Shown here one piece after another: positions 1 through 37,459 of a DNA stretch of 64,000 nucleotides; position 1 is the first letter of the stretch; each line of letters begins with the position of its first letter. Made by a program: the position numbers and the translations under genes. The notes under the pieces are model-generated. The model saw only the letters and a program-made list of their open reading frames with translations, ran no database searches and was not told the origin of the DNA. Origin of the DNA: Marsupella aquatica (Eukaryota; Plantae; Marchantiophyta); assembly GCA_973895155.1 (NCBI GenBank), contig OZ316898.1:18983292-19047291 (forward strand). Direction: 5' to 3'.

Positions 1-280
1 TTATGTTCTCTTGGTGTTCCTTTTTTAATAGTAAAAATGGTTTCTTAAATGTTATAGTAATTGAAGAGTTTCTTTCTACCCATGGTTATTCCAAAAATTG
101 CTAATTAAATAGAAAAATCATACAATCTATTGGAAAACACTGATATATCAATCACAACCCATCCAAAGATTATTTTCTTTTACACCCTTTCACCCCTTTC
201 TTTATTTATTTGAAATGTTATTTTTCAGTTTTCAATTGTTTTTACATTTACAAGGTCCAACTGTTTTTCTTTGACTTGTT

Positions 281-1724
281 TCAAACCAAGAAAAGACTTA
301 ACAAGACCCCTTTGGCATCTCCTGAAGGTAACAGTCCAGCAAGATGCCATGAAGACTTAACAAGACCCCTCTGACTGTCCACCGTCGCCAAGTTCTTGTT
401 GGAGTGCACACAGTAAGTCACACACTTATTGTTGAGTGTGTGTTTCACACTTGGTAAGAGCAGTATGTTTTAGCAAAGACTTTAGCAGGAGAGTTTAGGG
501 AGGGAGTCTTGAAGAGGCTGGGAGAGCCCAAAGTTCAACGCGGGAGGAAGTCAAAACTTTACTTTTTTGAATGAAAAACATTGGCAATCGATAGCTCCAG
601 TCTATTGAAGGAGGAAAACAGTGCCCCAAACCTCTATGGTCTTTGTTGGATCGTGGACATTGTTGGATCATGGACGCTACGCTTCATCGGATTGTGTTGG
701 ATGACTAAAATGCTGGCGACCTCCAAGGTACCACTACCTTATGGAATCATGATTTTGTTTTGAGATTTAAGGGTGCCTCCTCTATTCTGAAATCCAAAAG
801 AGTGGAAGCTGATTGCCTAGCTCTAAGGTACATTATAAGTTATTGAGATTCAATCGTCCACTTAGAAGTGTGGAAAATTTGGAGTTAACAGGCCAGGAAG
901 GGCTGTCATTCTTGTGAGGCGGCAGGCAAGCTTTGCCGTCGAATGTGAATCGCCAAAATTGAATACCAGGGGGCACCTAGCAGGGTCGCCCTTTGTATTT
1001 TATGGCGCCTTGAGTAATTGGTCAAAATTAAGAAGAAAATCAATGTAGCTTTCCCTCTGCTGGTCTGCCATCACCAACAATTGACATAATAGGTCAAAAT
1101 TTCAGTCAACATAATATACCCTATGTGCGATCATCTTCAATTCATGAGCAATAATTTCATGCCCCAAAAGTGCTAGCTGATATTTGATTTGAGACTGAAT
1201 GAGTGAGCCAGAATCAAGATTTCATTGGCACCTGCCAATGCTTTTGTTGAGAGGAATTTTGCTTTTGAGACTAGTTACTTTCCAGCTCAATGGAGATTTA
1301 GAAACTAGACGAGGACAATGGTCTTCCAAGACCGGTTTCAATCTACATTTCTTATCATGGCTTGTTTAGATTGGATCATGTCATCCCTGTGCATTGGTTA
1401 TGTTGAAACTCCCTTTCCTGGCTCCCTTCCCCAACATTTGCTGTTCTACTGTTTGAAACTGACCTCGCCACTTGCTGTTCATGCTTGCCCAAAAAGCTTC
1501 TTCAAGAGCCTCGGCTAAATCACCTCTACTCTGGTCCCAAGTCGACTAAATTGTGTACTGATGTGCTGTTCTTGTATGACAATGACTCATGCTCTGATAA
1601 CCACTCCATCAGAACCTGACAACGGTGTGCAGTCACAAGGATCTGGTTAAGTCTTGATGGCATTTTGTTGGACAGTTAGGTCCAAGAGATGCCAATGGGG
1701 TCTTGTTAAGTCTTTTCTTGGTTT
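281..1724. mobile_element. Decayed TIR DNA transposon, possibly hAT-like, with ~125-bp imperfect inverted repeats at 281-406 and 1602-1724
   Basis: aaaccaagaaaagacttaacaagacccc...ggcatctc (283-321) is the reverse complement of gagatgcc...ggggtcttgttaagtcttttcttggttt (1686-1724); pairing continues inward (381-406 vs 1602-1628). Internal 1207-1263 reads ARIKISLAPANAFVERNFA, resembling the hAT dimerisation motif PAxSAxxERxFS. No intact ORF. Confidence 0.5.
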
Positions 1725-2544: not shown

Positions 2545-3730
2545 GCAAAGGACCATGCTTGGATAATGTTTGAAATGGACCCATGTTGGATGACGTATCT
2601 TCAGTTACTTTTAGCAATAGACCCATGTTTGGCCGCTATGCTTTGAAAATTTGGGCATACGTCCATGCTCTCCTAATTTCAAAAACTAGTCCATGCCCTG
2701 GCCTGAAAATCAAATAGGGTAATGGCTCAACTTGTTCAAAGACTTATTTGATCTTCCTTTGGTTCTCATTGGCAGTCAAAGTCTATTGTTCGATCACAGA
2801 CCAGCTCTGAAGCGGGCTCTGTGGAGTGAAGCCTGGAGGGCATAATTTATCATGTAACAGAAAAAATTTGATATTTAGACTAGGCTTGCGAGTAGGGAAA
2901 GGGATTGACAGTTTGGGTGTAGTGAGCGCTGCCTATGCGAATGCAAGGGTATTTGGGCTAGTGAATAGTAAGGTAGTTGTTCCCTCCTACAAAAGAGCAG
3001 TCTCATGAATTAAGAAGTAAGTTAGACCCACCTAACATGTTGCATAGCATGGAACCTGTTGCAGCATCAGCACAAAATCTCCCATCCACAAAAAGGCTTG
3101 ATAGGGTGCTCAGATGGACAAATAGAACCTTGACAAACACAATCCATGCATTAAATTATACTCCAATAGCACTATTTACTTTGTTTACTACTCTTGGTTT
3201 TGTTACACTAGGGCTTTATCGTGTCCATGCGAGTGTCCATAACCAACCTTGTGGTCCATGGTGGCTCTTTGTTCCCCATTATATAACAACAAGCAGTTAT
3301 AGAGCATTTCACTGTCCACTTCTTAGATCTAGATTAAAATGATTAAAATTTGAAGGATAGCCTTAGGTGTTCTCAACAGCACTGCAGCCTGTACTCAATG
3401 ACCCATGCTAAGCTAATCTTAACACAGAGGAGCCCATGCCCAGGTAATTTCAGAAGTAGGCCAAAGCTTGACTAATTTGTGCATACCCAGGCCTAGCTAA
3501 TTTAAGCAACAGAACAATGTTTGGCTAATTCAGCAGAGGACCCATGTGGATGAAGTATGCTCAGCCAATTTTAGAAGTGGGCCCATGTTTGACCACTCAT
3601 GCTTGGAAATTTTTTGCATGGGTCAATGCTCAGCTAGGTTTGGAATTTGTCCATGCCGGGCTTGAAGATCAAAGAGGGTCATGGCTCAACTTGCTCAAGA
3701 CCTCATTGGTCTTCCTTTGGTCCTCCTTGA
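2545..3730 (+). repeat. Diverged ~150-bp direct repeat (2620-2770 vs 3580-3730) within ~30-bp cccatg...ctaattt minisatellite units
   Basis: atggctcaacttgttcaaagac...cttcctttggt vs atggctcaacttgctcaagac...cttcctttggt; repeated ccatg-containing units at 2545-2700 and 3400-3660. Confidence 0.6.
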
Positions 3731-21221: not shown

Positions 21222-24200
21222 TTACTGCTGCTGTAATTCGAAAAGTGCTTGCTGAACATTTCGTGAAATGCGGTCATGAATAAGCTCCTGAATACATCCA
21301 TGAGAGAAATGGCATGTGAGTACTAATTTTTTTACCTGCTTGCAGATAGATGATCGTTACGCCCCATACTTCAACAGTTTCTGTGTACAGTATCAGATAT
21401 CTGTGTCACTCACCTTTCTGCTAGGGAGTTTGATCCGACTCCCCGTGATAGTCTCAAACAGCAGAATGTATCTGCATACCAACAAAGCTTAGGTTTCAGG
21501 TGATGAGCAAATGATATTCTGAACTTTATTGAGAAAGCTAAGATACGAGAGGCTCACACTTTTCGTACTGTTGGAGGACATGAGTACTTAGTTATGAGAT
21601 TTGCACAACGCTAACGGTAGGACATGGAAACACAACCAACTGCACACCTCCATGAAAGCTCCGAGACAAGCTCCACTGGGGCATCCGGTAGAACCTGCCA
21701 AAATAGTACCACATTATGGCATTCAGTTTCTCTAAAAAGGTCAATGCCACTGTCAAAAGCGTAATTTGGATGGGCATGACTCATACCTCATCTGCATAAG
21801 GATTGCAATTGCTCTTGAACCAAAGCCGCAAGAACTCCTGCACAGAAGCAGCAATTATTGTGGGTCACTTTTCAGAACACTCAGGGTCGGTAGAGGCACA
21901 TCCGCAAAAAACAGTTCCCTAATGAAGACCATTTCGATTTAACTAGAGTGTAATACAAACCTTATCTACGTTTTCAGGTTCCAATCCTGCTTTCTGCCGA
22001 TCTTCATATGATGCAGCAATCCAGTACCGGCTGGAATCAGGAGTGTGTACCTGCAAAGCAATTAAATAACCTGGAAATTGAGTTGACTCCTTACATTTTA
22101 AAAGCCCAACAAACAGCAGGCAGGCCAATTGGGTTAAACAAACCTGGACAAGTAAATTTGAAATAAACGTCTGAGAGTATCAGTGTACATCGTCGAAATG
22201 AACTACAGAGAAAACTAACTCCTACAAGAACGTGATCTTATCTGTCGACTATGTCTACCCAAGCCTCCTCAAACATACTTTAAGACTTTGTTTAAACATG
22301 TTTTACCCAAGCCTCCCTCAAACACACTAGAAAGAGGGCACAGCACTATAGCTCGTCCAGAATTTCTTGGCACACTCTTTCAGACCACTCCCAACATTGA
22401 ACGCTGTTCTTGTGCCAAACTTCCTACTTTTTGTCCACATTCCCATTTGCAGCATGTAAAGTTTCAATTTTTTTCACAATTACTAAGGAGTTAGTTCCAT
22501 ATCTAGTTCATGTCTTGCATATTTTGAGAGAACAGGATTGATAGTCTTCTCTTATTCCTAAAAGCCCTGAAAATGCCTAGAAACAATGACAACACTTTTG
22601 AGCATACCTCGTCCACCAAGACGATTGAACCATCAGCTGTTTTTCCAAACTCATATTTAGTGTCTACTAAAAGAAGACCGTGTTTTTTCACCTCTTCCTG
22701 CCCTTTTCACAAGAAAGTCCAGAAATTAGGACGAATATACCTTTCTTATCCAAAGCTATTCATGGTAAAACGAGGCGGTGACCTACAAACCGTGGGATCT
22801 CTGGAAAGAATGTGGGCTTGCACAAGACGCGTAGACTGGGGGTGTTTGCAACTTCAATGACGTTTGCATACATACACAACGGCCGAATTCAGAGTCATCA
22901 TCAACGGGCTGTACATCCACCGAAAATTTCCACTCATTCATGCACTCTCGAAATCTAAGCTGGTGTAAGCGCTTTCACCCTAGAAATACCAGGCGTGAAC
23001 AACCAGACATTGGAGACGCTTATGCTACCTGTCCAAATGAAAAAAGTGCAAGGGCCCTGCTTGCAACTTCTTCAAAATCTTCCTTAGACATCAGTCCTTG
23101 CTCCACAATCTACACCAATGTAGTGTAATCATTTCAGTAAAGGATATGACGAATACTGAAGATGTGAGTAAGAACTTGAAAACATGAGAACAAAACAGCA
23201 TCTCTGCGAGTAATCCCAACACACTGAGAAGTGGCTTATATAAAAACCTAATCTTCAACTTCAAGGTTAACAAACTTCAAAAGTTAATAAACTTCAGACA
23301 CCACACCTCTTGCCCAGAAATAGGAACATCGTGATCTGCAGCTTTGGTGGTAGGAGTGATAATGTTCTCATCTAAACGCTGATTCTTCACGAAGCCTGTA
23401 TACAGGCTGAAGTTATCACCGAAGCATTTGTTCAAAATGAACCCCAACATTTGTAAAAGAACAGACAGGCGAAGAACCATCAGTTTAAGACTGTTTCCCA
23501 GTCCAGATTGTGGATAAAAGCTGTCGTTGGCAGTTCTCTGTCGCAGGCCATATTTCCACCTATATATCAAAGAATGCGTACAGTAAAGCACCTTGAAGTT
23601 CGTGTTTAAAGACCCTTGCCTATTAGTGCGTGATGACTGAAAGATGAGGTAGGGAAGTTTACCGTCAGGAAGTACATTGCCACAATAATTCCGCACCCCT
23701 CTGTCATAGACTGTCCAAAGCGACGTGCTCGTACTACCTGTCACAAAACCCCTCACTGCCCTGCAATCCTCTCAGTAACCGGCTCCGTAGGCACTCCTCA
23801 CGAAGAACTGTGAGTGAAGGCTATTATAGCCACTTGGGCATTGGTTGAGATGTCTATAACCCATGTAAAGAATGAGACAGCCTTAGATCTCATGTCACTA
23901 GTTTCGACGAAGAACACTCACCTACAAACTCCACAGGGAACACGGAACACTTGCGGGCAATTGTAACATTGGGGTCAGGTATGGCCGCAACAGCATTTGC
24001 CGTAATATGCCTTGTCCTATCAAACCACCAACCGCTGGTCTCGTTCAAGACCTGCACCAAGACACGTGGTCTCAGACTCACAGTCAGAAGCTTCATGGTA
24101 GACATTTCTAGTTTCTGTCTAGCGAGTACAGTACCCGCTCTCTAGGACTCTCGGTAGTCATTCGTTCGTTGTCAACCCAACTGTGTACCCATGGATATTA

Positions 24201-25221
24201 AACTAAGTTATCCTACCTTAATGTTCGTAATTCTGCAGGCGACCCAACAAAGTATCCCAGCAATAGTAATTTTAATTAAAAGGCATCTTAAAGATTGTAA
24301 AGACTACTAATCCCCATGAAACTCCCCTCTCTTGGATAGACATGGATGTCAATTTGCTGCAGAGACTTAAAGCAAGACCCTAACAATAAAGGAGCCACGA
24401 GTCGTCCCAGTGTCTCACAATTTTAAGGCCCACATGCCAGCGCTAGTTACCTGTCCTTTGAAAGGCACAGAGGCCAGCACTCTGTCGAACGCACTCTGTC
24501 GATCAGTTGTAACGAGGACCACATGTTCACCAGCGTCGTACATGTCCCTAACCTGCACATTGCAATCGTTCAAAATAATTGAGGGGCCTCGCAGTTCCAC
24601 ATTGTCCCCGCTTGTTATTAGTGCATCTCCCTTTTGAATACCTTGGTCTGCTTGTTCTACTATCTCTCATCAACATCATAAACCCTAAACCCTATCACAC
24701 AACGAAAAAAGTCCAGGAAACCGTTCAGGAAAGCAGAAAATCATCAACGAAGGTTAGCGGTGGTGCACAATTTGAACATCATATCGCCCTTCATTGAACT
24801 AAAAGCAAAGTGAAAAATTCTACACGTTGTCAAAATTTCAGAAGGAAGGAGTGCTCACTTTGCCCCGCATTCTGGGTCCAAGGCCCTTCAAAGTCTCGTC
24901 TAGATGAGTTTCAGTGAGGCAGTTGGCAAGCGACAGTGCAATTGCATCAGAAACCTCCCCACGTCGGGACTCGAGCTGCACTTGTGGGAGGGCAGCAGAC
25001 GCTCTCACTGCCCAATTCATCTTTCTTCGCAAAGGATGAGTGACAGACAAAACCAGCCCCCTTCGAAGAAAATTTCCACCACCTCCTGTATCCTTGTCCA
25101 ACAATCCTCCTTTGGCCTTCGATACAATTCTGTTGGTTGATTCTGTTACCACCTCACCGGAATTAGCGGCCCCTCCCACGAGACAATTCTTCCACAATTC
25201 TGTAGCAGTAACAGCAGCCAT
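21222..25221 (-). CDS. PUR7: Phosphoribosylaminoimidazole-succinocarboxamide (SAICAR) synthetase, ~419 aa with an N-terminal transit-peptide-like extension
   Basis: Exons 25221-24859, 24552-24451, 24051-23922, 23755-23663, 23395-23307, 23109-23029, 22697-22608, 22050-21961, 21837-21787, 21694-21648, 21471-21414, 21287-21222; all GT-AG and phase-consistent (1260 nt). Motifs GKVRDMY, TTDRQSAFD, VDTKYEFG, DEVHTPDSSRYW, DKEFLRLW. Confidence 0.96.
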
Positions 25222-25354
25222 AGCTGGAGTTGCTCAAGTCCTTCTTCGCCTAAGAGAACGTCTCATGAATACTCAGGAAGAGGTATGCTGAGCTCAATGG
25301 CCTCTGTCTATTGTTGTTGAAGACTAGACTAATACAACTGATCGATTGAATCAA

Positions 25355-26927
25355 TCTGTGGGTGTCGGAGGAGTGCTGTGATTCAAACACACCCTTCCAA
25401 CGCTGGGAAAACTGTATCTCCAGCCTCCAGAGCTTCAGCCGTTTCTGTCTGGGAGTATATGGCTCGAATCTTGTGGGTTTGCTCGATCGTCGTGCTTCCA
25501 AAGCTGATGCGATTGCGTTCATGAAATCGACTGCGTTCGAGAAATCTTCAAGTGTTCCAGAGCACCAAAAGGGGTTTCACAGTAGGATAGAGAACTCTTC
25601 AGCGTGACGGATAAGATATCGAGAGCACATACAAAAAAGTTCATCGCCAGGAAAGATAGAGAGCCATTGGATTAGTTTGGCTGTTTTTCTTGACCATTGA
25701 TGGAGTAAATGGACACCCGTGGCACATATGTGCTTCCCCACACTGCCCCATAAATGCCCGGCCTTCCTATGGACTGGTACTCTTTGCGGCCAGTGCAAAG
25801 CATGGGCATAGGGCTTGTGGTTACATAATAACTCTAGACCTAAGAATAAATGCCGAATAACAGAAGGTGAAATAGTAGTATTGAAACTAAAATGAATGAA
25901 AGATATGTGATTTGACATAAAGGAGTGGCAATAGACCTATCCCTAAGGTCATTAAATTTCTTGTGCAATTTTAGCAAAAAATTCAGAATAAAACATTAAT
26001 ATCCCCAACCTGGTGCCTCTTTCCTTAGTAAAGTTGCATGAAAGGAAACACTTTGAACATGAAAAGAAAACTTTATGATAACTTTTTGGGCCACCAAATG
26101 AATACTTCAAAGTTTTTCAATTTTCTTCACATACCATATATGCATCCCTAGAGCACATTCCTGTCTGACTTGCTAACTTAGTTAAAACATTGGATGTGGC
26201 CCATTAGCTCTTGTCACATTGGAAAATGTGGAATAAGTTAGTTAAAATATTGGATGTGGCCCATTAGCTCTTGTCACATTGGAAAATGTGGACACTAGTC
26301 ATTGAGTTAGCACTCATGTAGTATTTGACATTTTCCCCATTATCTTCTTCCTTTTTATGGATTTCACTTGTTTTTCTTTTCCTGGTTTGGTGTTAGTCCT
26401 CTTTGAATCTCTTTTTCTTTACTTTCATTGTATTTTGATTTTGCCTGATTTATAAATTTTGCTGCAAGTTAGATTTCATATATGAACCTGTCAGAATTTA
26501 GGGATAGGTCGAATGTAGTAAATCTGAATATCAGAAAACGCTGTGCTGTGGAGAACTCTGCCCCCGAACGCTTCTCTCCATGAAACCCGCCCCTACAAAG
26601 ATCTTGGGGTGGCAGGCAAAATTCGTAAATACGAATCTCCCGCCATCTGTAGTGCTCTCGATATCTTATCCGTCACGCTGAAGAGTTCTCTATACTACCG
26701 TGAAATCCCTTTTGGTGCTCCGGAACACCTGAAGATTTCTCGAACGCAGTCGATTTCATGAACGCCATCGCATCAGCTTTGGAAGCACGACGATCGAGCA
26801 AACCCACAAGATTCGAGCCATTTTTCTCCCACACAGAAACGGCTGAAGCTCTGGAGGCTGGAGATACGGTTTTCCCAGCGTCGGAAGGAGTGTTTGAATC
26901 ACAGCACTCCTCCGGGACACCCACAGA
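25355..26927. repeat. Inverted duplication of ~275 bp (25355-25628 and 26652-26927) between the divergent PUR7 and FLIP genes
   Basis: gtgctctcgatatcttatccgtcacgctgaagagttctct...gacacccacaga is present on - at 25628-25355 and on + at 26652-26927, with about 15 differences by eye. Confidence 0.97.
26178..26292 (+). repeat. 60-bp tandem duplication in the spacer of the inverted repeat
   Basis: tagttaaaa(c/t)attggatgtggcccattagctcttgtcacattggaaaatgtgga occurs twice. Confidence 0.95.
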
Positions 26928-27175
26928 ATGCTCTCTCTTTCAATGGAAACGCTCGTTTGATTGGTCAAATCTTTCGCATCTACAGCAGGTTTGAATAATT
27001 TTGTTAGCTCTGTTCATTTAACACTCTGTCTCGTTTGTTCGAGTCGTTCGTAACTAGGTCGAAGCATTTTCTCAAGCTCCAGCAAAGAAGGCTGAGCTAT
27101 ACACGCTATGTTTCGTTTTCGTTCGCTTTTATATTTCGTTTGGGCATTTAGTCAAAGCTCAGCACAGAAATCTTA

Positions 27176-27339
27176 GCTTTACCAGCGCTGTCTGTGCACG
27201 GTGTTTTCGAGGATTTACTAATCTTTGAATTTGACGAACTAGAAATTCTGCAATGTTGCTTTACCAACGCTGTCTGTGCACGGTGTTTTCGAGGTTTCAC
27301 TAATCTTTGAATTCGACGAACTAAAAATTCTGCAATGTT
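27176..27339 (+). repeat. ~81-bp tandem duplication in the putative FLIP 5'UTR intron
   Basis: gctttacca(g/a)cgctgtctgtgcacggtgttttcgagg...gacgaacta(g/a)aaattctgcaatgtt occurs twice. Confidence 0.95.
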
Positions 27340-27509
27340 GGCTCCTGCAGTTCACTTGAACGTCTCTACGGCAATCGGGACTTCCGGTTATTATGATGTA
27401 ACAAGCAACTGAACAAAATTAAGAAACCACCCCGGTTTCTTTCCCTGTCCTACGCGATTTCTCCCTGCGGAGGGACGGACAACAATTTTGTTAGGGAGAG
27501 CCCTCGAGA

Positions 27510-30500
27510 ATGCCACCAGCAGCGACTAGGCAGGCTGCTGGGATGGAAACTTTGGTGGATCCCCCTTTTTCCAGCTCTGAATTGAAAGTCGCTGTTGTAA
27601 GACTGTCTACAGACAAGGTGAGGTTTCTTCTCTCGGGCCTCTTTTCTTTGCCTCGCTCCCGTCTGTGCCACCAACCAAAGTTCCATTCCTCACTTGACCG
27701 GGTTTTGTTTCATCGCCTTTTGCATCCGTCTATTTCGTTTGTTCTTTTGTAGTTTTGGGTTTGAGTCCCCCCTCGTCCTATTTGAAGTCGACGAATGGAT
27801 CGTCTGTTTGAATTTGATTCTCCAGCTCCCTATTCCAAGTCATCGAATTTGTTCTTCCGCAGCACTACATTATGGTGGTTATGTCGTCCTTTAGCGTTTC
27901 TCCTGTCGAGCTGTAGCTCTACCAGATCATTCCACTCTGTAAAGTTGTCACGTGGATTCAAGCTCAAGCTTAAGGAAAGTAGTTTTGTGTTGTGATTTTG
28001 GCGATCTCCTATTCAGCTGCTGTATCTCGTTTGTTTTCATGGTAAGCCCAAGGCTTTCGGTTAGACATGACCAAACCAGTCTGTGTCTGGTACCTTCAGG
28101 CTTTTAGCTCCATTCTGTGTGTGACAGTAAGTGGAACAACTGAACTGACGGCTCGTGGTGTAATCTCCAGGTCCTCTGTTCTCGAAAGAAGATCTTGGAG
28201 GAGATTTGTTGTAGAGCTCCGGTCAGCTCGGCCGCCTTACGTACCGTTTGGGAAGCCTTGACAGTATCCGATAAATAATCCATTTGCGGAATATTTAGTG
28301 AGTCATTTTAGCATTTGTTCAAAACACTAGACTGAGGCCAGGGCTAGATCAGAACTTAGCCAAAAAATCAAGGAATCACAGCAATTAGTTTCCTGATTTC
28401 TTTGCCAGTCAGATGGGAAATCTGTTAGCACTGCGTTAGACACGTAGTTCACTTGTTCAGATCAGGGAGTCTGCTCTTCTTGCTAGGTAGTCCCCTCATT
28501 GCTAACCTCCATCTTCCAACATTAGACCCTGGTAGTCTCGGTACAATACTGACCCGGGACTCATTTATCTATTGAAGTACTCTGTCCCGAAGAGTGAGTA
28601 AGAAGGTCATGGTTTTGCGGAGTCTATTTTGATTGCGATTCATTTGTCGGGAAATTCCCAGTTTCGTTGTGGACCTTGACTGCTTGGCGGGCTTCCTGGA
28701 AAGACCCACAGTACTCTGGATCAGAGCTTTCCGAATGGCGGACGTCTGTTATTGAAGCTGCCGATGGACCCACAAAAGAATCAAAGGGAATGCCCGAGAT
28801 CTTCATTTTATACGCTGAGCTTGCGGTCAAGGTAACTGCTCTCTTTCGTAAGGCTATTCCCTGTTTGAGAATTGTCCTTCGCTTAGACTTGGAGTTGTCT
28901 CAGCAGTCTGTTCCTCTTCAGGTGATCCCCTTCGCATTCGAATTGTGTCCACACTCGATTGTCGATAAGGCGTCTTTCTAAATATTGTCAGCCCATACAT
29001 TCGAGTGTAGGGAGGCAACTGGTGCATGAAGATTACTGCTGCATATGTCCAGGATTGCTTGTCCCAGCGCGATTCGCTAGCTGAAGTCACCAAGGTATGG
29101 AGGTCAGTTGATCGCGTCATGTGTCGTTGATGATTTGAATCATGTTGGCGGGTAACATTCTCTGGCAATATCATTTTCCAGCCGATTACAGTGATCAAGG
29201 ACGCAATCATGCCTAGTATATGTGGCCGGGTTTAAGTTTTATTCACTGAATGTCTATTCCTGGCTGGGAGGAACTTTGGGAGGAACTTTGGGAGGAACTT
29301 TGGGAGAAGCAAATTTCAAACGGGGTAGTCCTCGAATTCTCATCTGGGAAACATTTACTGCGGTTAAGATTGTTTTCTCTGGTGGTTTCAGATACAACAG
29401 GCGGTCATACGACTAACTTCCAGAGTCTTCGAAGCAGTGGCAGATGTCTATTTGGCAGGCCAAACCCTCCTGTTTGAGGAACCTTCCGCGTCAACTTTGG
29501 AGAGTTTGGCATCAAATGCGTTCGAGCTCGTGAGACTAATCTACGTTTCTATGATGGTGAGCTTATGGTCGTCGTTTCAGTGTCTGGGTTCGGCCAATCT
29601 TTGTCTTTCACACTATCCCGATGTGATAACAGGTAGCGTAGGCTTAGCGAGCCACCTCCACGGGTGTCAAATTGCATTGAATTGACTTCGGCTCATCAGG
29701 GGAAAAACTTTGCAAGTTTTAAATAGATAACTTGATGTGTTTGAGCAGAAAAAACCGTCGTCACAGCCTGCCGACGACGATGTGCTGAGGAAACGTTGTC
29801 AGGATCTTCTGAATGTGACCTACCGGCTTGTACACATTTTCCGCCGGCAGGTGGGCGGTAGGCTCCAAGAAACGAATCACAATTCCCAAGAGCAAAGCAG
29901 TCCTGGAAGTAGATGGTCTCATGTGCCGACAGCACTACGGGTAGTAGCCTCTTCTATTCAAAGTTTCGCAGAATTTGGTAAACTATCAACTTCCAGTGGG
30001 GAGAGACCTCTTGCCCTTCTGAGCATCTCCTGGAAGAGCATTTTGGCATTACTGCAGGTGGACGAAGGAAGAGACGCTGTGGCTTCCGTAGTTGACATAA
30101 CATCTATTTTAGTGACCCTGATCTCCAATGCTGTACAGGCGACGAAGCGAGCCATTGAGACCTGGATAGTAAAGTGCACAAATTTCGAACAGAAGGAAGC
30201 TCGGAAGCTGTGCATTCCAATCAAGTTCTTCTTGATTACAGCGCTGAAGATATCATCAGTTTATCCACAAAAGGCAGTAATGGCCAATAGGAACATGATC
30301 TCTTTCGCATCAAAAGTTTATGCGTGTTTGCTTCAAAAGGATCTCATACGTCACAAGGCAGCTACAGAGGAATTTTCTGAACTTGTCGTCCCCACAGCAT
30401 TCGCTCTTTTGCAGAATCTCCTGAATGACCGAAGTATAAATGAAGACCTGAAAATTCAGATTCTGCGAGACATCACGATCGATTCCGATGAATTGGAGAT

Positions 30501-32451
30501 TTCACAGGCGATCACCGATTTAGATGGATGTGCTGAGGGGAATGACATTGTGGACGAGCTGTTCTGCAACAAACCGGCGTTGTGTCCAGGTGCAGGGCTG
30601 GTGAGGACCGGTAAAGTGGTGCTGTTTCTCTCCGTTTTGCGCTCCTCTGGCAGCTACAGTAAGGCCCTGCTCTATGAACTTCTGGCAAAGCTGCGATGGC
30701 TCCTGGACGAAGTTCCTGAAGAAGGGATGTATGTGCTTATGACACAGACACTTTACTTACCTGTTGATCGTTCGGACGTGAGTGGAAAGTGGAAATGGCA
30801 GGTTATGGTTCTTTGGGTATCACATGCCATTGAAGTCTTTGCGGCAGTAACAACGAAGCAGGAGGCCATCTGGACTGAGTTCAAGTACTTTCTCTTTGAC
30901 GAAGTATTGCATCCCTCTGCTATCTGTGGAGAGTTGGTGCTGAATGTATGGAGCTTCATCATACGGCAAAGTGACCCTGAGATGGCTCTGGACCATGTTG
31001 GTTCTTTATTATCTATCCTTCGACAATCAAACGTTACCGAGGAGGAAGAATCTTTGCAACGGAGATTGGCCAGGACAATCTGCGTTCTTCTTCAAGCTGC
31101 TCCCAAAGCTGTCGCTTCACAAGTCTGTAACACTAATCCGTTTCATTCAGATGAAGATGCGACCATTATCACCCAGCTTCTACAGGAGGGGCTCCCTCTT
31201 AGTAAGCCTGGATCCAACAGTCTACTCTCCTGCTGCATTGCTTGTGGAAAGGGTTTGGTTGAATCCCTCAAGGTGGAAAGTCGAGCTCTTCACTCACAGT
31301 TTTATGTCCCAAAACGTGCGCTTGTGTGCTTGTCGCTGTTAATCTCGCAAAGGTGATAGTCCGTTCTAAACTCATCCACATTTCGGTTTATAGAGATGTT
31401 TGCTTAGGAGTTTGACGACAGTGACAAATCATTGTATTTTCGCGGATATCGCTCATGCTAAAGGTTGACTATTAGATTCATGACTAAAGACTCTCAGTGA
31501 ATTTAGTGCATTACCCTTGACGAAGACAATTGAAGCGTCTAAGATCTTTCCTCTCTCAACTGCAGTGCTTGTCGAGGCGAATTGATAGAGGAAAAATACC
31601 TGGAGGAGATTAAGCAAATCGTTCTTTGTTTGATTTCGATGTACACTTTCGATCATAACAAGTCCCGCATGTTTCATAGTCAAGGGATTATTGGTCCTAC
31701 ATTGGAGCTGATTCCATACGTGCAACATTTGCTAGATCCGACAAAATTGGAAGAATTACTTCCCAGGCTTCTAGAAATATGTCTTACCACTCCGGATACC
31801 TCTAATTACAGTAAAGAGCTGAAGCAGTCGATGCCCGAGTTCCTAGCAAATCTCAGTGATGTTGCTATACAGGAAGATGAGAGCAACCCAGCAATGAAGG
31901 CTCTGTGGGGTCTGTATCATCTAGTACTCAGAGAAAAGCCTTGGGCCCTAATTCATATGGGCTTACTATCTTTTGCACATTTCGCTGCTCACACCTCTTG
32001 CCAAGAGCTTTGGCGGTTTGTACCACCGGATGCAGCTGTAGTTTCTAATGGAAATGGAGATGATGATTTTATGACGGCCCTGAAAGGTTTCATCGAAAAG
32101 GAGTGCGCCCTTCTTTCCCTGGCTTCATCTGCGGAAGAGCTCCAATTGTTGAGAACCGAATCGAATTTACAGCAGCAGAAGCACAAGAGAGTTCTTGCTG
32201 CTCTCAGAAATTCTAAGGATGGAGAAGAGGGTGTAAAAATTCAGCAAAGTACAAAGCTTGGCACTAAACCGCCTTCAGGCAGTTCTGAAATCCAGGAAGC
32301 AGTTGCAATGCTATGCAAGGGGATGGGCGTGCTGAAGGATAGAGCCCCAGAGATGCTTAAGGGTGAAGCCTCTCAACAATGGGAAGCTTTAGGCGCTCGG
32401 CTGGAAGAAATGAACAAACAAGTTAAAGCTTTCCAGCGTCTGGACGGATGA
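27510..32451 (+). CDS. FLIP: FLIP/MEICA1/FIRRM(C1orf112)-like DUF4487 protein, partner of the FIGL1 anti-recombinase, ~1028 aa
   Basis: Exons 27510-27617, 28171-28240, 28662-28831, 29011-29094, 29392-29556, 29749-31352, 31566-32451 (3087 nt, phases consistent). C-terminal ALWGLYHLVLREKPWALIHMGLLSFAHFAAHTSCQELWRFVPPDAA and central LLSISWKSILALLQ / CIPIKFFLITALKI match plant FLIP motifs as I recall them. The small 5' exons are less certain. Confidence 0.8.
29266..29305 (+). repeat. 12-bp tandem repeat (gggaggaacttt) x3 in a FLIP intron
   Basis: Read directly from the sequence. Confidence 0.9.
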
Positions 32452-34616: not shown

Positions 34617-36418
34617 ATGTATCGGTCCAGACAAAGACGGGTGGGTAGTGGGAATGGAATGCTGTACATGCTGGCCCTGCATGCGGCTACCAAATTCATG
34701 CAACTCCCACGCAAACCTCCCGTCACTGCCTCGTTGATCTTGGCGAACACGGTTGTTTATTTGAGGCCTGGCGTCCTTGATGCGATTCTTCCTTCTGTGG
34801 ACGAAGTCTGCCTTAGTCCCTATCGTGTTATAAGGGTATGTTCTCTGACTATGCATTCTCACCTCCCTGTAAACCTCTTCGATTGTAATCATTCAAACAC
34901 CTAGTTTAAATCATACTCAAGATTCATGGCGTCTGAACCCTAGGTACTACTTTGGTGATGGACAGGTGTAGATTGCCCTTTCGATGCATAAGAATTTGTT
35001 CCATTAGGTTTCGGTTAGAGTCAATCGCTCGAACAATGGGTTGCCATGGGACAAATATAGGGTTCCAAGAAGTTAGTTGTAGCAAGATGAAGAAAGGGGT
35101 TACCTTAGCGCATACCAGCAAAGCGCGACCTGAACGTGATTTGATGTGCGGCGAATTTAAGAGCGTCGGAGAAGTGAGGTTGTTGAATGGCTAAAATCAA
35201 TCAACTTGCTCTTAAAGTCGAAAGTCCGAGGAAGAAGCTCTGTCTAAGCCCCCCAGTTCTAGAGATAACTAGCCATGATCACTGAGTTACAGTTTCACGA
35301 ATTAGTGGCATCAAAGCTAGCATGATTGTCCCGTTGGTTTCGTTTCTTCCTGAAGAAAAAACTAGCCACTCTGCCCCTACCGATGTGGCCTGCGGATCAA
35401 TTTCAAGAGGATATTGGAAAGTGAGTACTCTTTTTTTCGTTAGCCGAGACTGATGTCGCGGTAAGAGTTGGTTCTACTCCATATTTTGGGAATGCTTTTC
35501 TTATCGTGGGTGGTTAGATTTGGAACTCTTGGGTATCCATTCGGCTGGAATATATCGAGGAAAAGAGGTCGCTGACAATGATATGATTCTTGGGGTTTGC
35601 AGGACCTGGATGCGAAGCGGCTATTGCTGTCGGCGTTTTATCATATGGATGACGCTCATTTGGTATATAACATGGTGTCGTTGTTGTGGAAAGGCGTCCA
35701 GCTGGAGAACACTATGGGCAGTGCAAGGTTTGCGGGCACGGTGACAGTGCTCTTGGGGATGTCACATGGGCTTGTGGTATTGTCCGCCAAGTTGTTGGCC
35801 ATGTATGCGGACACCCCTGGGCCTATGTACTCGGAATGTGCTGTGGGTTTCTCGGCTGTCCTCTTTGCCTTGAAGACGGTTTTGAATTGGGACTCACCTG
35901 ATTACACAAACATTTATGGCATGCTTGTTCCTTCAAAATACGCTGCCTGGGCAGAGCTTTTCCTGATTCAATTGTTCGTCCCGGGAACTTCTTTTCTGGG
36001 CCACCTGTGTGGTATACTTGCTGGCCTTATTTACGTGAATGCTGGACCGTTACTTAGCGGAAGTTACTCTCCTTTTGTGTGGGTGAAGAGATTGCTTCAA
36101 CGTCCCCTATCTGTGCTATTGCAGCCATTGACGTCCATTTTAGGATGGAGGCATCAAGGGCGGATCCATGGACGTGGCACAGCGGGCAATAGAAATAGTG
36201 TGTGGCGTTGCCAAGTCTGCACTTACGATAATGGTGGGTTGAGAGATGACTGTGAGATGTGTGGTTCCTCTCGAGGAACCTCACCTGAGAGTTCTTCAGA
36301 GGAACCTGACCCTACAGCCCCACCTTGGCCTGAAGAGGAGCAAGAATATTTGCCTCCGACTGTGGAGGAATTGCGCCGCGCCCGCTTGGCACGTTTTAAT
36401 AGAAGTACCGGTAGATAA
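34617..36418 (+). CDS. RBL14: Rhomboid protease, RBL14/RHBDL4-like, with a RanBP2-type zinc finger, 344 aa
   Basis: Exons 34617-34835 and 35603-36418. Motifs RKPPVTA, LLSAFYHMDDAHLVYNM, catalytic AVGFSAVLF and SFLGHLCGILAG, WRCQVCTYDN...CEMC, and C-terminal EELRRARLARF. Confidence 0.92.
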
Positions 36419-37459
36419 TGTGCAATTGAAGAATCAGCGTCCGGGCTTGATCGCAAGTTTTTGAGGTGTCCCCAGTTGTAAATAATTACATTTGTGATAA
36501 CGACATTCTTCCACAATAAGTCACTATATGGTTGTGGTTCAGCTGTAGCTTTGGCAAACACTATGCTTCATTGGGAATGTCTGATGGTCACTTGGGTTGG
36601 CAGCTTGGTCCTATGCTTTCTTCAAATTCCTAATCTGTTGGCATTCTCCGCTGTACTGTGGGTTTGTGGATGAAACCAGTAAAGGGACGATGACTAGCAT
36701 ACATTGTCAAAAGTCAAATTGCTCTCGTCCTTCACTTTCGCCTGACATCCTCCTGAGATTGGCGGATACTTGATCTTTCGTGCAGAATCAGCTTAATGTT
36801 CAGATTTCTCTCCCTGCTTTGTACTTTCATCTCGTTGGCATATTGAGCACAAGTTGACCAAGTTTTCTCGAGTTCCTCCATCCTTGCCGAGATGGCAAAG
36901 AGGCTGAATGATCTTTGAAGCTGGGCTGTCGTGTCATGAAGTGGTTGGTGTTGAGATCTTGGTTATTGTGCTCCCGAAAACATGTCCCTCTTATTTCCAA
37001 TTTTTTGTTACTTCCCTCTTAGCTTCTGTGCAAGGTTTGAGAACTGCGGCGCAGCAGAACTGGGCTATTGCCGAACATTCACGGTAGGTTTCCTTCAAAG
37101 ATGAGCCTCATCTTGTTGGCACTATCGGGAATTGGCCTGTTTGGTTTCTTCACGGCTCAGCAGTCATTTCTACGGCTACTGTATTTGACATAGATTCTGG
37201 AGCGAGTGACATTTGCGTTCGAAGATTCATCACAATGAGATGTATCAAGTCCATTGAAGAGTGTTGCTCTGTCTGATGAAGTCTGCTCTAGAGGACAATG
37301 TCATCCACAAGGACAACTCTAGTGACGTCTGCAAAGGTGAACTACGGTATTGCCAACAGAAGAAAGGCGACCTCTCCTTCCATTCTTCAATGACCTCTAC
37401 AACCACATGAGCATCCTCAGGAGGTGGCTCTCTCAACATCAAGGTTCAAACTTCATTCT

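What the first reader, a model, noticed from the sequence alone, without database searches (positions are those of the whole stretch)
25250..27620. Two unrelated divergent genes (PUR7 and FLIP) start from mirror-image copies of one promoter/leader module
Seen: the same ~275 bp (about 15 differences by eye) lies just upstream of the PUR7 ATG on - and points toward FLIP on +. The + copy is followed by a donor (cag|gtttga, 26988/26989), a T-rich intron-like stretch and an acceptor (ctgcag, 27350) leading to the FLIP ATG, so it looks like FLIP's first untranslated exon. Both copies begin with gatatcttatccgtcacg (GATAAG/I-box-like and TGACG-like motifs) and face outward. Inference: an inverted duplication gave a purine-synthesis gene and a recombination regulator the same core promoter and leader, a symmetric alternative to an ordinary bidirectional promoter. 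It could also make the ~1-kb spacer invertible by recombination, or yield hairpin RNA on read-through.
Basis: partly seen in the sequence, partly recalled or inferred. Interest (0 to 1): 0.8.

Follow-up and report, generated by a model that had tools for sequence, protein, structure and literature searches.

The report
Inverted copy of FLIP leader beside PUR7
In this liverwort genome a 285-base piece lying just downstream of the recombination gene FLIP's conserved promoter was copied backwards about 1 kb away, next to the neighbouring purine-synthesis gene PUR7; it looks like a small repair or replication scar, not a transposon, and not a demonstrated shared promoter.

Summary
Arms at 25349-25633 and 26648-26933 form a ~285-bp inverted repeat, 94% identical, around a 1,014-bp AT-rich spacer. 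It lies between SAICAR synthetase (PUR7, minus strand, ATG 25221) and a DUF4487/FLIP gene (plus strand, ATG 27511).

- **Ancestral arm.** In both Calypogeia fissa homeologs, the FLIP upstream DNA aligns across the inner boundary of arm R and again inside the arm. Arm R is therefore ancestral FLIP 5' DNA, and arm L is a younger, lineage-specific copy.
- **Not a transposon.** There is no target-site duplication, and no further copies in the window or in the related loci.
- **The promoter was not copied.** A ~75-bp block sits immediately upstream of arm R and is conserved across species. It carries a TATA-like box and an E2F-type site (TCTCCCGCC, 26636-26644), which Riccia also has upstream of FLIP. 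It lies outside the repeat, so the two genes do not share this conserved promoter block. At most they share a leader-like segment.
- **Adjacency.** PUR7 is not within 10 kb of FLIP in C. fissa or Riccia.

The geometry fits fold-back, templated break repair. Transcription start sites, the proposed 5'UTR intron and any function remain untested.

The scan noted two similar inverted 5' duplications elsewhere in this genome. I could not check them.

The parts
26648..26933 (+). Arm R: the ancestral copy. It is promoter-proximal FLIP 5' DNA, probably the start of the FLIP leader (5'UTR exon 1).
   Evidence: It is 94% identical to arm L. Positions 26708-26846 align to C. fissa L004:9566-9716 and L006:9570-9716, upstream of FLIP and in the same orientation. 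The alignment L004:8623-8734 = window 26574-26682 crosses its inner boundary. CpG o/e is 1.06.
25349..25633 (-). Arm L: the derived inverted copy of arm R. It lies 130 bp upstream of the PUR7 ATG.
   Evidence: Its inner flank is unrelated to arm R's flank. C. fissa and Riccia have no inverted copy within 10 kb upstream of FLIP. At four CpG sites arm R keeps the CpG while arm L has TpG or CpA; C. fissa confirms arm R as ancestral at one of them. CpG o/e is 0.89.
25634..26647 (.). Single-copy spacer of 1,014 bp. Its core is AT-rich and almost free of CpG. Its right end is the FLIP promoter block.
   Evidence: GC is 0.31-0.38, and there are no CpGs at all across 25950-26399. It has no other copy in the window or in the fetched loci.
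26574..26647 (+). Conserved FLIP promoter block, not duplicated. It includes a TATA-like GTAAATAC at 26625-26632.
   Evidence: It aligns to C. fissa L004:8623-8697 and L006:8670-8744. A 24-nt pattern spanning the TATA-like box and the E2F-type site, with one R (A/G) position, matches L004:8671-8694 exactly. The block is 97% identical between the C. fissa homeologs, against 87% for their wider 2.8-kb upstream region.
26636..26644 (+). E2F-type site TCTCCCGCC (E2FAT consensus TYTCCCGCC). It ends 3 nt before the start of arm R.
   Evidence: It is the only match to the consensus in the 64 kb. It is identical in both C. fissa homeologs. Riccia has TTTCCCGCC followed by the same CTGTAGT, 615 bp upstream of its FLIP ATG; 12 of 1000 shuffles reach that local score. 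The consensus is taken from PMC5464667.
24841..25221 (-). PUR7 (SAICAR synthetase) coding exon 1, mostly a transit-peptide-like region.
   Evidence: The ORF is. It is homologous to P0002 and P0003. L002's gene start aligns to the same ATG. Downstream exons hit PF01259.
25222..25348 (-). Unique PUR7-proximal stretch between the ATG and arm L. It may hold PUR7's own 5'UTR or core promoter.
   Evidence: It has no homology to the outer flank of arm R and none to L002's upstream DNA.
27511..27617 (+). FLIP (DUF4487) first coding exon.
   Evidence: The C. fissa annotated CDS start (L004:10001) aligns to window 27509-27511. The large exons hit PF14868.
26934..27510 (+). CpG-rich, non-conserved stretch between arm R and the FLIP ATG.
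   Evidence: It does not align with C. fissa.

Best explanation
A lineage-specific, DNA-level inverted duplication. The first ~285 bp downstream of FLIP's conserved promoter block (TATA-like box plus E2F-type site) was copied once, in reverse. The copy was deposited about 1 kb upstream, where it now abuts the last 130 bp before the PUR7 start codon. The source was most likely the start of FLIP's untranslated leader. The layout is a single-copy spacer, with the inner end of the copy matching the inner end of the source. That is what fold-back (snap-back) priming gives: a resected break end at about 25634 primes on its own strand at about 26648, about 285 nt are synthesised, and the end is then joined to the PUR7 side. 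A replication template switch would give the same product. Shown: the repeat, its boundaries, that arm R is ancestral, that the conserved promoter block is not duplicated, and that no inverted copy lies within 10 kb upstream of FLIP in two other liverworts. Inferred: that arm R is transcribed leader, the repair mechanism, and that arm L is mainly a passenger. By position (-131 to -412 from the ATG, and still CpG-rich) arm L now lies inside PUR7's promoter or 5'UTR zone.
For: The repeat and its sharp boundaries are. Orthology of arm R together with its inner flank to both C. fissa homeologs comes from blastn (E 6e-11 and 2e-11), the alignment, and a 24-nt pattern with one R position that matches L004 exactly. 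The E2F-type site lies outside the arm. The arms are about 94% identical, while arm versus C. fissa is about 65%, so the copy is much younger than the species split. In well-aligned columns C. fissa agrees with arm R at 5 sites where the arms differ. At four CpG sites arm R keeps the CpG and arm L has TpG or CpA; C. fissa confirms arm R as ancestral at only one of these, the others resting on the usual direction of CpG decay. There is no TSD. There are no other copies in the window or in about 75 kb of related loci. PUR7 is absent within 10 kb of FLIP in C. fissa (both homeologs) and Riccia.
Against: No transcript data exist, so neither TSS is known. Genome-wide copy number could not be measured, because no plant genome collection was searchable. 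The one metagenome scan returned only a chance bacterial 24-mer. The PUR7 locus of C. fissa could not be fetched, so an older arm-like sequence at PUR7 is not excluded. The only comparison species are distant, with about 70-78% nucleotide identity within the gene. Outgroup polarisation is weak: 5 sites favour arm R as ancestral, but up to 3 sites in poorly aligned columns favour arm L. Junction microhomology cannot be judged without the pre-event sequence.
Confidence: 0.7

Rival explanations
1. One reading: the two arms are functional mirror-image promoter/leader modules, so PUR7 and FLIP initiate from equivalent sequences and are co-regulated.
For: Both arms face outward. Arm L lies at -131 to -412 from the PUR7 ATG, and both arms keep a CpG o/e of about 0.9-1.1 while the spacer core has almost no CpG. 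This fits an unmethylated promoter-proximal state. Two similar cases were noted by the scan in this genome (unchecked).
Against: The conserved FLIP promoter block with the E2F-type site is outside the repeat, and nothing similar flanks arm L. Each arm carries a long upstream ORF starting at an ATG (78 and 90 codons) that is not conserved in C. fissa, which reads ACG there.
Confidence: 0.18
2. The arms are the terminal inverted repeats of a non-autonomous DNA transposon (MULE-like or foldback-like) inserted between the genes, or two independent insertions of a dispersed repeat.
For: Long arms (~285 bp) around an AT-rich, CpG-poor 1-kb core resemble long-TIR elements. This genome is rich in DNA transposons according to earlier notes.
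Against: There is no TSD of 7 bp or more, even allowing one mismatch, at any boundary within the ranges scanned (25338-25361 on the left, 26920-26944 on the right). Arm R and its inner flank are collinear with the FLIP upstream region of C. fissa, so the 'TIR' boundary is not an insertion boundary. There are no other copies in 64 kb plus about 75 kb of related loci. The arms are not CpG-depleted.
Confidence: 0.03
3. The inverted repeat is a young hairpin-RNA (hp-siRNA or proto-miRNA) locus. Read-through across the spacer makes double-stranded RNA that targets the FLIP (and PUR7) leaders.
For: A read-through RNA of either strand is predicted to pair 263-270 positions between the arms. Cofold energy is -521 kcal/mol against -167 +/- 6 for shuffles. 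Inverted duplication of gene segments is the classical route to young plant MIRNA loci (my own knowledge: Allen et al. 2004).
Against: The conserved FLIP promoter block at the right end of the spacer points outward, and no promoter directing transcription across the spacer is evident. The arms retain CpG, so there is no sign of long-term RNA-directed methylation. There are no small-RNA data and no Rfam match.
Confidence: 0.07
4. Assembly artefact, that is a false palindrome.
For: None specific.
Against: The arms differ at 13 positions plus 4 indels and are separated by 1 kb of unique sequence. Artefactual palindromes are near-perfect and lack a spacer.
Confidence: 0.02

Closest known systems
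Fold-back / snap-back templated inverted duplications at DNA breaks (PMC3907307 for large human cases with single-copy spacers; PMC11724301 for short templated inverted insertions in yeast); 'filler DNA' at plant end-joining junctions
   Same: Two inverted copies are separated by a single-copy spacer. One copy sits in its original context. The inner end of the copy corresponds to the inner end of the source, as fold-back priming predicts.
   Different: The size class is intermediate: 285-bp arms and a 1-kb spacer, against kb-to-Mb arms in human cases and 5-34 bp in the yeast amplicons. The event is fixed in a germ line. Junction microhomology is not recoverable, and the mechanism is inferred from geometry only.
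Bidirectional promoters of head-to-head plant gene pairs (for example PMC3834115, PMC4885881)
   Same: Two divergent genes flank one intergenic region.
   Different: The ATG-to-ATG distance is 2,290 bp. The conserved FLIP promoter block is unidirectionally placed and unique. The symmetry comes from a duplicated downstream segment, not from a shared central element. No expression data exist.
Inverted-duplication origin of young plant MIRNA / hp-siRNA loci (Allen et al. 2004; recalled, not read here)
   Same: An inverted copy of part of a gene lies close to its source, giving a long near-perfect hairpin if it is transcribed through.
   Different: The arms come from a non-coding leader. They face outward from the spacer, and no transcription across them or small RNAs have been shown.
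E2F-regulated plant promoters (E2FAT element TYTCCCGCC; PMC5464667)
   Same: An exact TCTCCCGCC sits next to a TATA-like box upstream of a DNA-recombination gene, and is conserved in C. fissa and, as TTTCCCGCC, in Riccia.
   Different: Binding and cell-cycle regulation are untested in any liverwort. The element belongs to the unduplicated flank, not to the repeat itself.
Long-TIR non-autonomous DNA transposons (MULE-like, foldback)
   Same: The overall shape is arms plus an AT-rich core.
   Different: There is no TSD, an orthologous sequence crosses the arm boundary in another genus, and no further copies were seen.

Membership tests
DNA transposon with terminal inverted repeats | Target-site duplication directly flanking the two outer ends | tested here: not met
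   The scan covered element starts 25338-25361, element ends 26920-26944, and k from 3 to 12. The best result was 6 bp with one mismatch at inconsistent offsets.
DNA transposon with terminal inverted repeats | The arm boundary is an insertion boundary, with an empty site or unrelated flank in orthologous loci | tested here: not met
   C. fissa L004:8623-8734 and L006:8670-8781 align continuously across window 26574-26682, which is the spacer-arm R junction.
DNA transposon with terminal inverted repeats | Multiple dispersed copies in the genome | not testable with these tools
   There are two copies in 64 kb and none elsewhere in L002-L006. No plant genome collection is searchable. The metagenome 24-mer scan gave only a bacterial chance hit.
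Local inverted segmental duplication (fold-back / template-switch product) | Two inverted copies separated by a single-copy spacer, with sharp boundaries | tested here: met
Local inverted segmental duplication (fold-back / template-switch product) | One copy in its ancestral context and the second absent from outgroups | tested here: met
   Arm R is orthologous to C. fissa FLIP upstream DNA. No inverted copy lies within 10 kb upstream of FLIP in L004, L005 or L006. The PUR7 loci of the outgroups were not obtainable.
Local inverted segmental duplication (fold-back / template-switch product) | Microhomology at the priming junction | tested here: inconclusive
   A shared TGTA precedes the solid homology, with a 1-nt indel. 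The pre-event sequence is unknown.
Shared (bidirectional or mirrored) promoter | Both transcription start sites depend on the shared element | not testable with these tools
   There are no transcript or TSS data. Exact look-ups of the exon-1 ORF and the leader ORF found no independent contigs.
Shared (bidirectional or mirrored) promoter | The conserved promoter elements of the source gene are present in both copies | tested here: not met
   The conserved block at 26574-26647, with the TATA-like box and the E2F-type site, is outside the repeat. Arm L's inner flank is unrelated.
E2F-target promoter | A consensus E2F site (TYTCCCGCC / TTTSSCGSS) close to the start of the gene, conserved in orthologues | tested here: met
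   The consensus is from PMC5464667.
E2F-target promoter | E2F binding and cell-cycle-dependent expression | not testable with these tools
   This requires ChIP or expression data.
Hairpin small-RNA locus | Transcription through both arms and production of small RNAs | not testable with these tools
   Only the folding potential was shown. Rfam gave no match.

The most novel reading that the evidence does not exclude
This may be one instance of a recurrent process in this leafy-liverwort genome. In that process the promoter-proximal 5' segment of a gene is copied backwards toward its divergent neighbour, so the neighbour acquires a foreign leader or promoter-proximal sequence. The cases flagged so far are DNA-repair genes: FLIP here and NBS1 about 7 Mb away, plus a third unchecked pair. 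The tandem amplification of the same FLIP leader segment in Calypogeia suggests that this promoter-proximal DNA is a break- or template-switch-prone site in more than one lineage. An even bolder variant: recombination between the arms would flip the spacer and hand the E2F promoter block from FLIP to PUR7.
Probability: 0.12. Interest if true: 0.6.

Novelty: new member of a known kind. Interest (0 to 1): 0.3.

Why it matters
If arm L does influence PUR7, this would be a small natural example of a gene acquiring another gene's 5' leader through repair-mediated inverted duplication, and it would be cheap to test. A more solid by-product is a deeply conserved FLIP promoter block with an E2F-type site, found in leafy (Calypogeia and this species) and complex-thalloid (Riccia) liverworts. 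That points to cell-cycle control of this anti-crossover factor in early land plants. It also shows that this promoter-proximal segment has been duplicated independently in two lineages: tandemly in Calypogeia and inverted here. Otherwise the feature is an ordinary structural scar.

Tried and rejected
1. **Metagenome scan.** A 24-mer from the arm returned a single hit in a 57%-GC bacterial contig, with only the 24 nt identical.
2. **Rfam.** Nothing matched at E<=1 on 24800-28000.
3. **Pfam.** The open frames inside the arms and the spacer gave nothing. The arm ORFs differ by frameshifts between the arms, and the ATG is ACG in C. fissa, so they are not coding.
4. **Homology beyond the arm ends.** MAFFT suggested an outer extension, but it is not better than shuffles.
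5. **PUR7 exon-1 relatives.** These were L002 from a Logan run and a JGI contig with no DNA available. They are too distant (71% nucleotide identity in the exon) for the upstream DNA to align.
6. **Alignment of 26934-27510 to C. fissa.**
7. **Exact look-ups.** The exon-1 ORF and the leader ORF were searched in public assemblies, and none is on record.
8. **Staggered-break inversion model.** I considered inverted duplications at inversion breakpoints and rejected this model. Arm R keeps both of its ancestral flanks, whereas that model leaves each copy with only one.
9. **RNA-mediated (retrocopy) origin.** I considered it because the copy starts near the predicted TSS. I rejected it because no downstream FLIP exon sequence follows arm L.
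10. **Joined exon models.** I did not build them. Full-length PUR7 or FLIP models of this species were therefore never searched, and the C. fissa PUR7 locus could not be retrieved.
Full report
**1. What is there**

The region holds one clean inverted repeat.
- The arms are 25349/25352-25633 and 26648-26930/26933. They are about 282-286 bp long and 93.7-94% identical.
- The core has 13 mismatches and 4 small indels.
- The arms are separated by 1,014 bp of single-copy DNA.
- Only these two copies occur in the 64-kb window.
- Both ends of the homology are sharp. Local alignment of the outer and inner flanks is no better than shuffled sequence.
- The arms are too diverged, and too far apart, to be an assembly palindrome.

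**2. The genes**

- Minus-strand open frames at 24418-24666 and 22506-22706 hit SAICAR_synt (PF01259).
- Plus-strand frames at 29731-31353 and 31543-32448 hit DUF4487 (PF14868), the FLIP / FIGNL1-interacting family (FLIP is described in PMC5897033, listed).
- The PUR7 ATG at 25221 coincides with the start of a homologous gene call on a Logan contig (L002).
- The FLIP ATG at 27511 coincides with the annotated CDS start of Calypogeia fissa FLIP.
- Arm L ends 130 bp before the PUR7 ATG. Arm R ends about 580 bp before the FLIP ATG.
- I searched exons singly, by reference, and never joined them. Full-length spliced models of this species' PUR7 and FLIP were therefore not searched.

**3. The organism**

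- The closest protein to the large FLIP exon is from Calypogeia fissa, at 76% identity (P0004). A homeolog, P0070, is also present.
- Riccia sorocarpa is next among full-length proteins, at 43%.
- The window is therefore from a liverwort, most likely a leafy one.

**4. The key comparison**

I fetched the FLIP loci of both C. fissa homeologs (L004 and L006) and of Riccia (L005), each with 10 kb upstream. Two upstream stretches of C. fissa align to the window.
- L004:8623-8734 and L006:8670-8781 align to window 26574-26682. This alignment runs from the spacer straight across the inner boundary of arm R.
- L004:9566-9716 and L006:9570-9716 align to window 26708-26846, inside arm R and in the same orientation.

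Arm R, together with the 75 bp on its spacer side, is therefore ancestral FLIP upstream DNA.

The arms are 94% alike, whereas arm versus C. fissa is about 65%. The inverted copy (arm L) is thus far younger than the split of the two lineages.

No inverted copy exists in the 10 kb upstream of FLIP in C. fissa or Riccia. PUR7 is not within 10 kb of FLIP in any of the three loci (tblastn with three PUR7 exons plus one further minus-strand open frame).

This evidence disposes of the transposon reading.
- The 'TIR' boundary is not an insertion boundary.
- There is no target-site duplication.
- The arms are not CpG-depleted.

**5. The promoter block was not copied**

The 75 bp immediately upstream of arm R (26574-26647) is the best-conserved non-coding stretch of the whole intergenic region.
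- A 24-nt pattern with one R (A/G) position, spanning a TATA-like GTAAATAC and the sequence TCTCCCGCC, matches C. fissa exactly.
- The block is 97% identical between the two C. fissa homeologs, whereas their wider 2.8-kb upstream region is 87% identical.
- TCTCCCGCC (26636-26644) is an exact match to the plant E2FAT element TYTCCCGCC (consensus as given in PMC5464667). It is the only such match in the 64 kb.
- On its own, that single match is not statistically remarkable: 0.43 matches are expected by chance. Its weight comes from conservation.
- Riccia has its only TTTSSCGSS match in 24 kb at 615 bp upstream of its FLIP ATG. There TTTCCCGCCAT is followed by the same CTGTAGT as in the window. 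Twelve of 1000 shuffles reach that local score.

The arm homology begins at 26648, three bases after this site.

The duplicated unit thus starts exactly where the conserved promoter block ends. With a TATA-like box about 20-30 bp upstream, that is about where transcription would be expected to start. It also means that the conserved promoter block itself was not duplicated. Arm L is preceded by unrelated sequence with no E2F-type site.

**6. Direction and decay**

- In the well-aligned columns, C. fissa agrees with arm R at five sites where the arms differ. It agrees with arm L only in up to three poorly aligned columns. This is suggestive, not significant.
- At four sites arm R keeps a CpG and arm L has TpG or CpA. 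C. fissa confirms arm R as ancestral at only one of them (26721). The others rest on the usual direction of CpG decay.
- CpG observed/expected is 1.06 in arm R, 0.89 in arm L, about 1.0-1.6 from the promoter block to the FLIP ATG, 0.35 over the spacer, and zero across 25950-26399.
- This pattern fits an unmethylated FLIP 5' domain, a still largely unmethylated arm L, and a methylated or simply AT-rich spacer core.

**7. Mechanism (inferred)**

The inner end of arm L corresponds to the inner end of arm R, and a single-copy spacer lies between them. Fold-back priming gives exactly this product:
1. A break occurs near 25634.
2. Resection exposes the minus-strand 3' end.
3. That end anneals to its own strand near 26648 and copies about 285 nt.
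4. The end is then joined to the PUR7 side.

A replication template switch would give the same result. Fold-back inverted duplications with spacers are documented at larger scale (PMC3907307) and smaller scale (PMC11724301); both papers appear.

I rejected two alternatives.
- **Staggered-break inversion.** Arm R keeps both of its ancestral flanks, which that model does not predict.
- **Retrocopy.** No downstream FLIP exon sequence follows arm L.

**8. What stays open**

- No TSS or RNA data were reachable.
- The proposed donor at 26988/26989 and acceptor at 27350 are plausible strings. The stretch 26934-27510 does not align with C. fissa, so there is no comparative test.
- Each arm contains an ATG-initiated upstream ORF of 78 codons (arm R) or 90 codons (arm L). 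The ORF is not conserved, since C. fissa reads ACG at that position. If the arms are leaders, they would burden translation.
- A transcript reading through the spacer would form a stem of about 265 bp (-521 kcal/mol). Nothing shows that such a transcript exists.
- Genome-wide copy number could not be measured.

**9. Context from the scan**

Earlier notes on this same genome describe two other cases (unchecked by me, outside my window).
- An inverted copy of the NBS1 5' region lies directly in front of a divergent neighbour (s1-772930, followed up).
- A 1.2-kb inverted duplication is shared by another divergent pair (s1-775392).

The scan has therefore seen this kind of thing before, on other DNA of this genome.

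C. fissa also carries about four tandem ~140-bp copies of the arm-homologous segment upstream of FLIP. Taken together, this hints that promoter-proximal DNA is prone to duplication here. It is a lead, not a result.

**10. Verdict**

It is a young, local inverted duplication of FLIP's promoter-proximal leader-like segment, now lying next to PUR7. The claim of a shared core promoter is not supported. Function is unknown, and the copy is most likely incidental. It is a new instance of a known kind of rearrangement, of modest interest.

Noticed in passing
L004:9070-9625 and L006:9104-9626 (Calypogeia fissa, upstream of FLIP): The segment homologous to the middle of the arm (window ~26700-26775) is present as about four diverged tandem units of ~140 bp in both homeologs. 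A further collinear copy sits right after the promoter block. The same leader segment has therefore been amplified independently, in direct orientation, in another genus.
   Followed up: partly
   Followed up: no
window 26174-26292: A tandem duplication of a 59-60-bp unit (97% identical) lies in the AT-rich spacer core.
   Followed up: no
window 277-406 and 1602-1730: A second inverted repeat has similar geometry: 130-bp arms, 84% identical, with a spacer of about 1.2 kb. It sits at the edge of the window. A 235-bp direct repeat (75% identical) is nearby at 2539-2771 / 3500-3729.
   Followed up: no
window 25950-26399: This 450-bp stretch has no CpG at all (GC 0.31-0.38). It is flanked by CpG-rich arms, making a sharp compositional island boundary on both sides.
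   Followed up: partly
window 34648-36427 vs L005:20811-22356: The gene downstream of FLIP (Rhomboid plus RanBP-type zinc ribbon in Riccia's annotation) is syntenic between this genome and Riccia sorocarpa. It was not detected downstream of FLIP in either C. fissa homeolog. Upstream neighbours differ in all three species.
   Followed up: no
L004:20261-20423 vs L006:8945-9087: A ~160-bp stretch inside the C. fissa FLIP upstream region recurs, inverted, downstream of the FLIP gene on the other homeolog. It is probably a dispersed repeat inserted into the C. fissa leader region.
   Followed up: no
whole genome (earlier notes): Earlier notes on this genome name it variously as peat moss (Sphagnum), moss and liverwort. 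The FLIP protein comparison here (76% to Calypogeia fissa, 43% to Riccia) supports a liverwort.
   Followed up: partly
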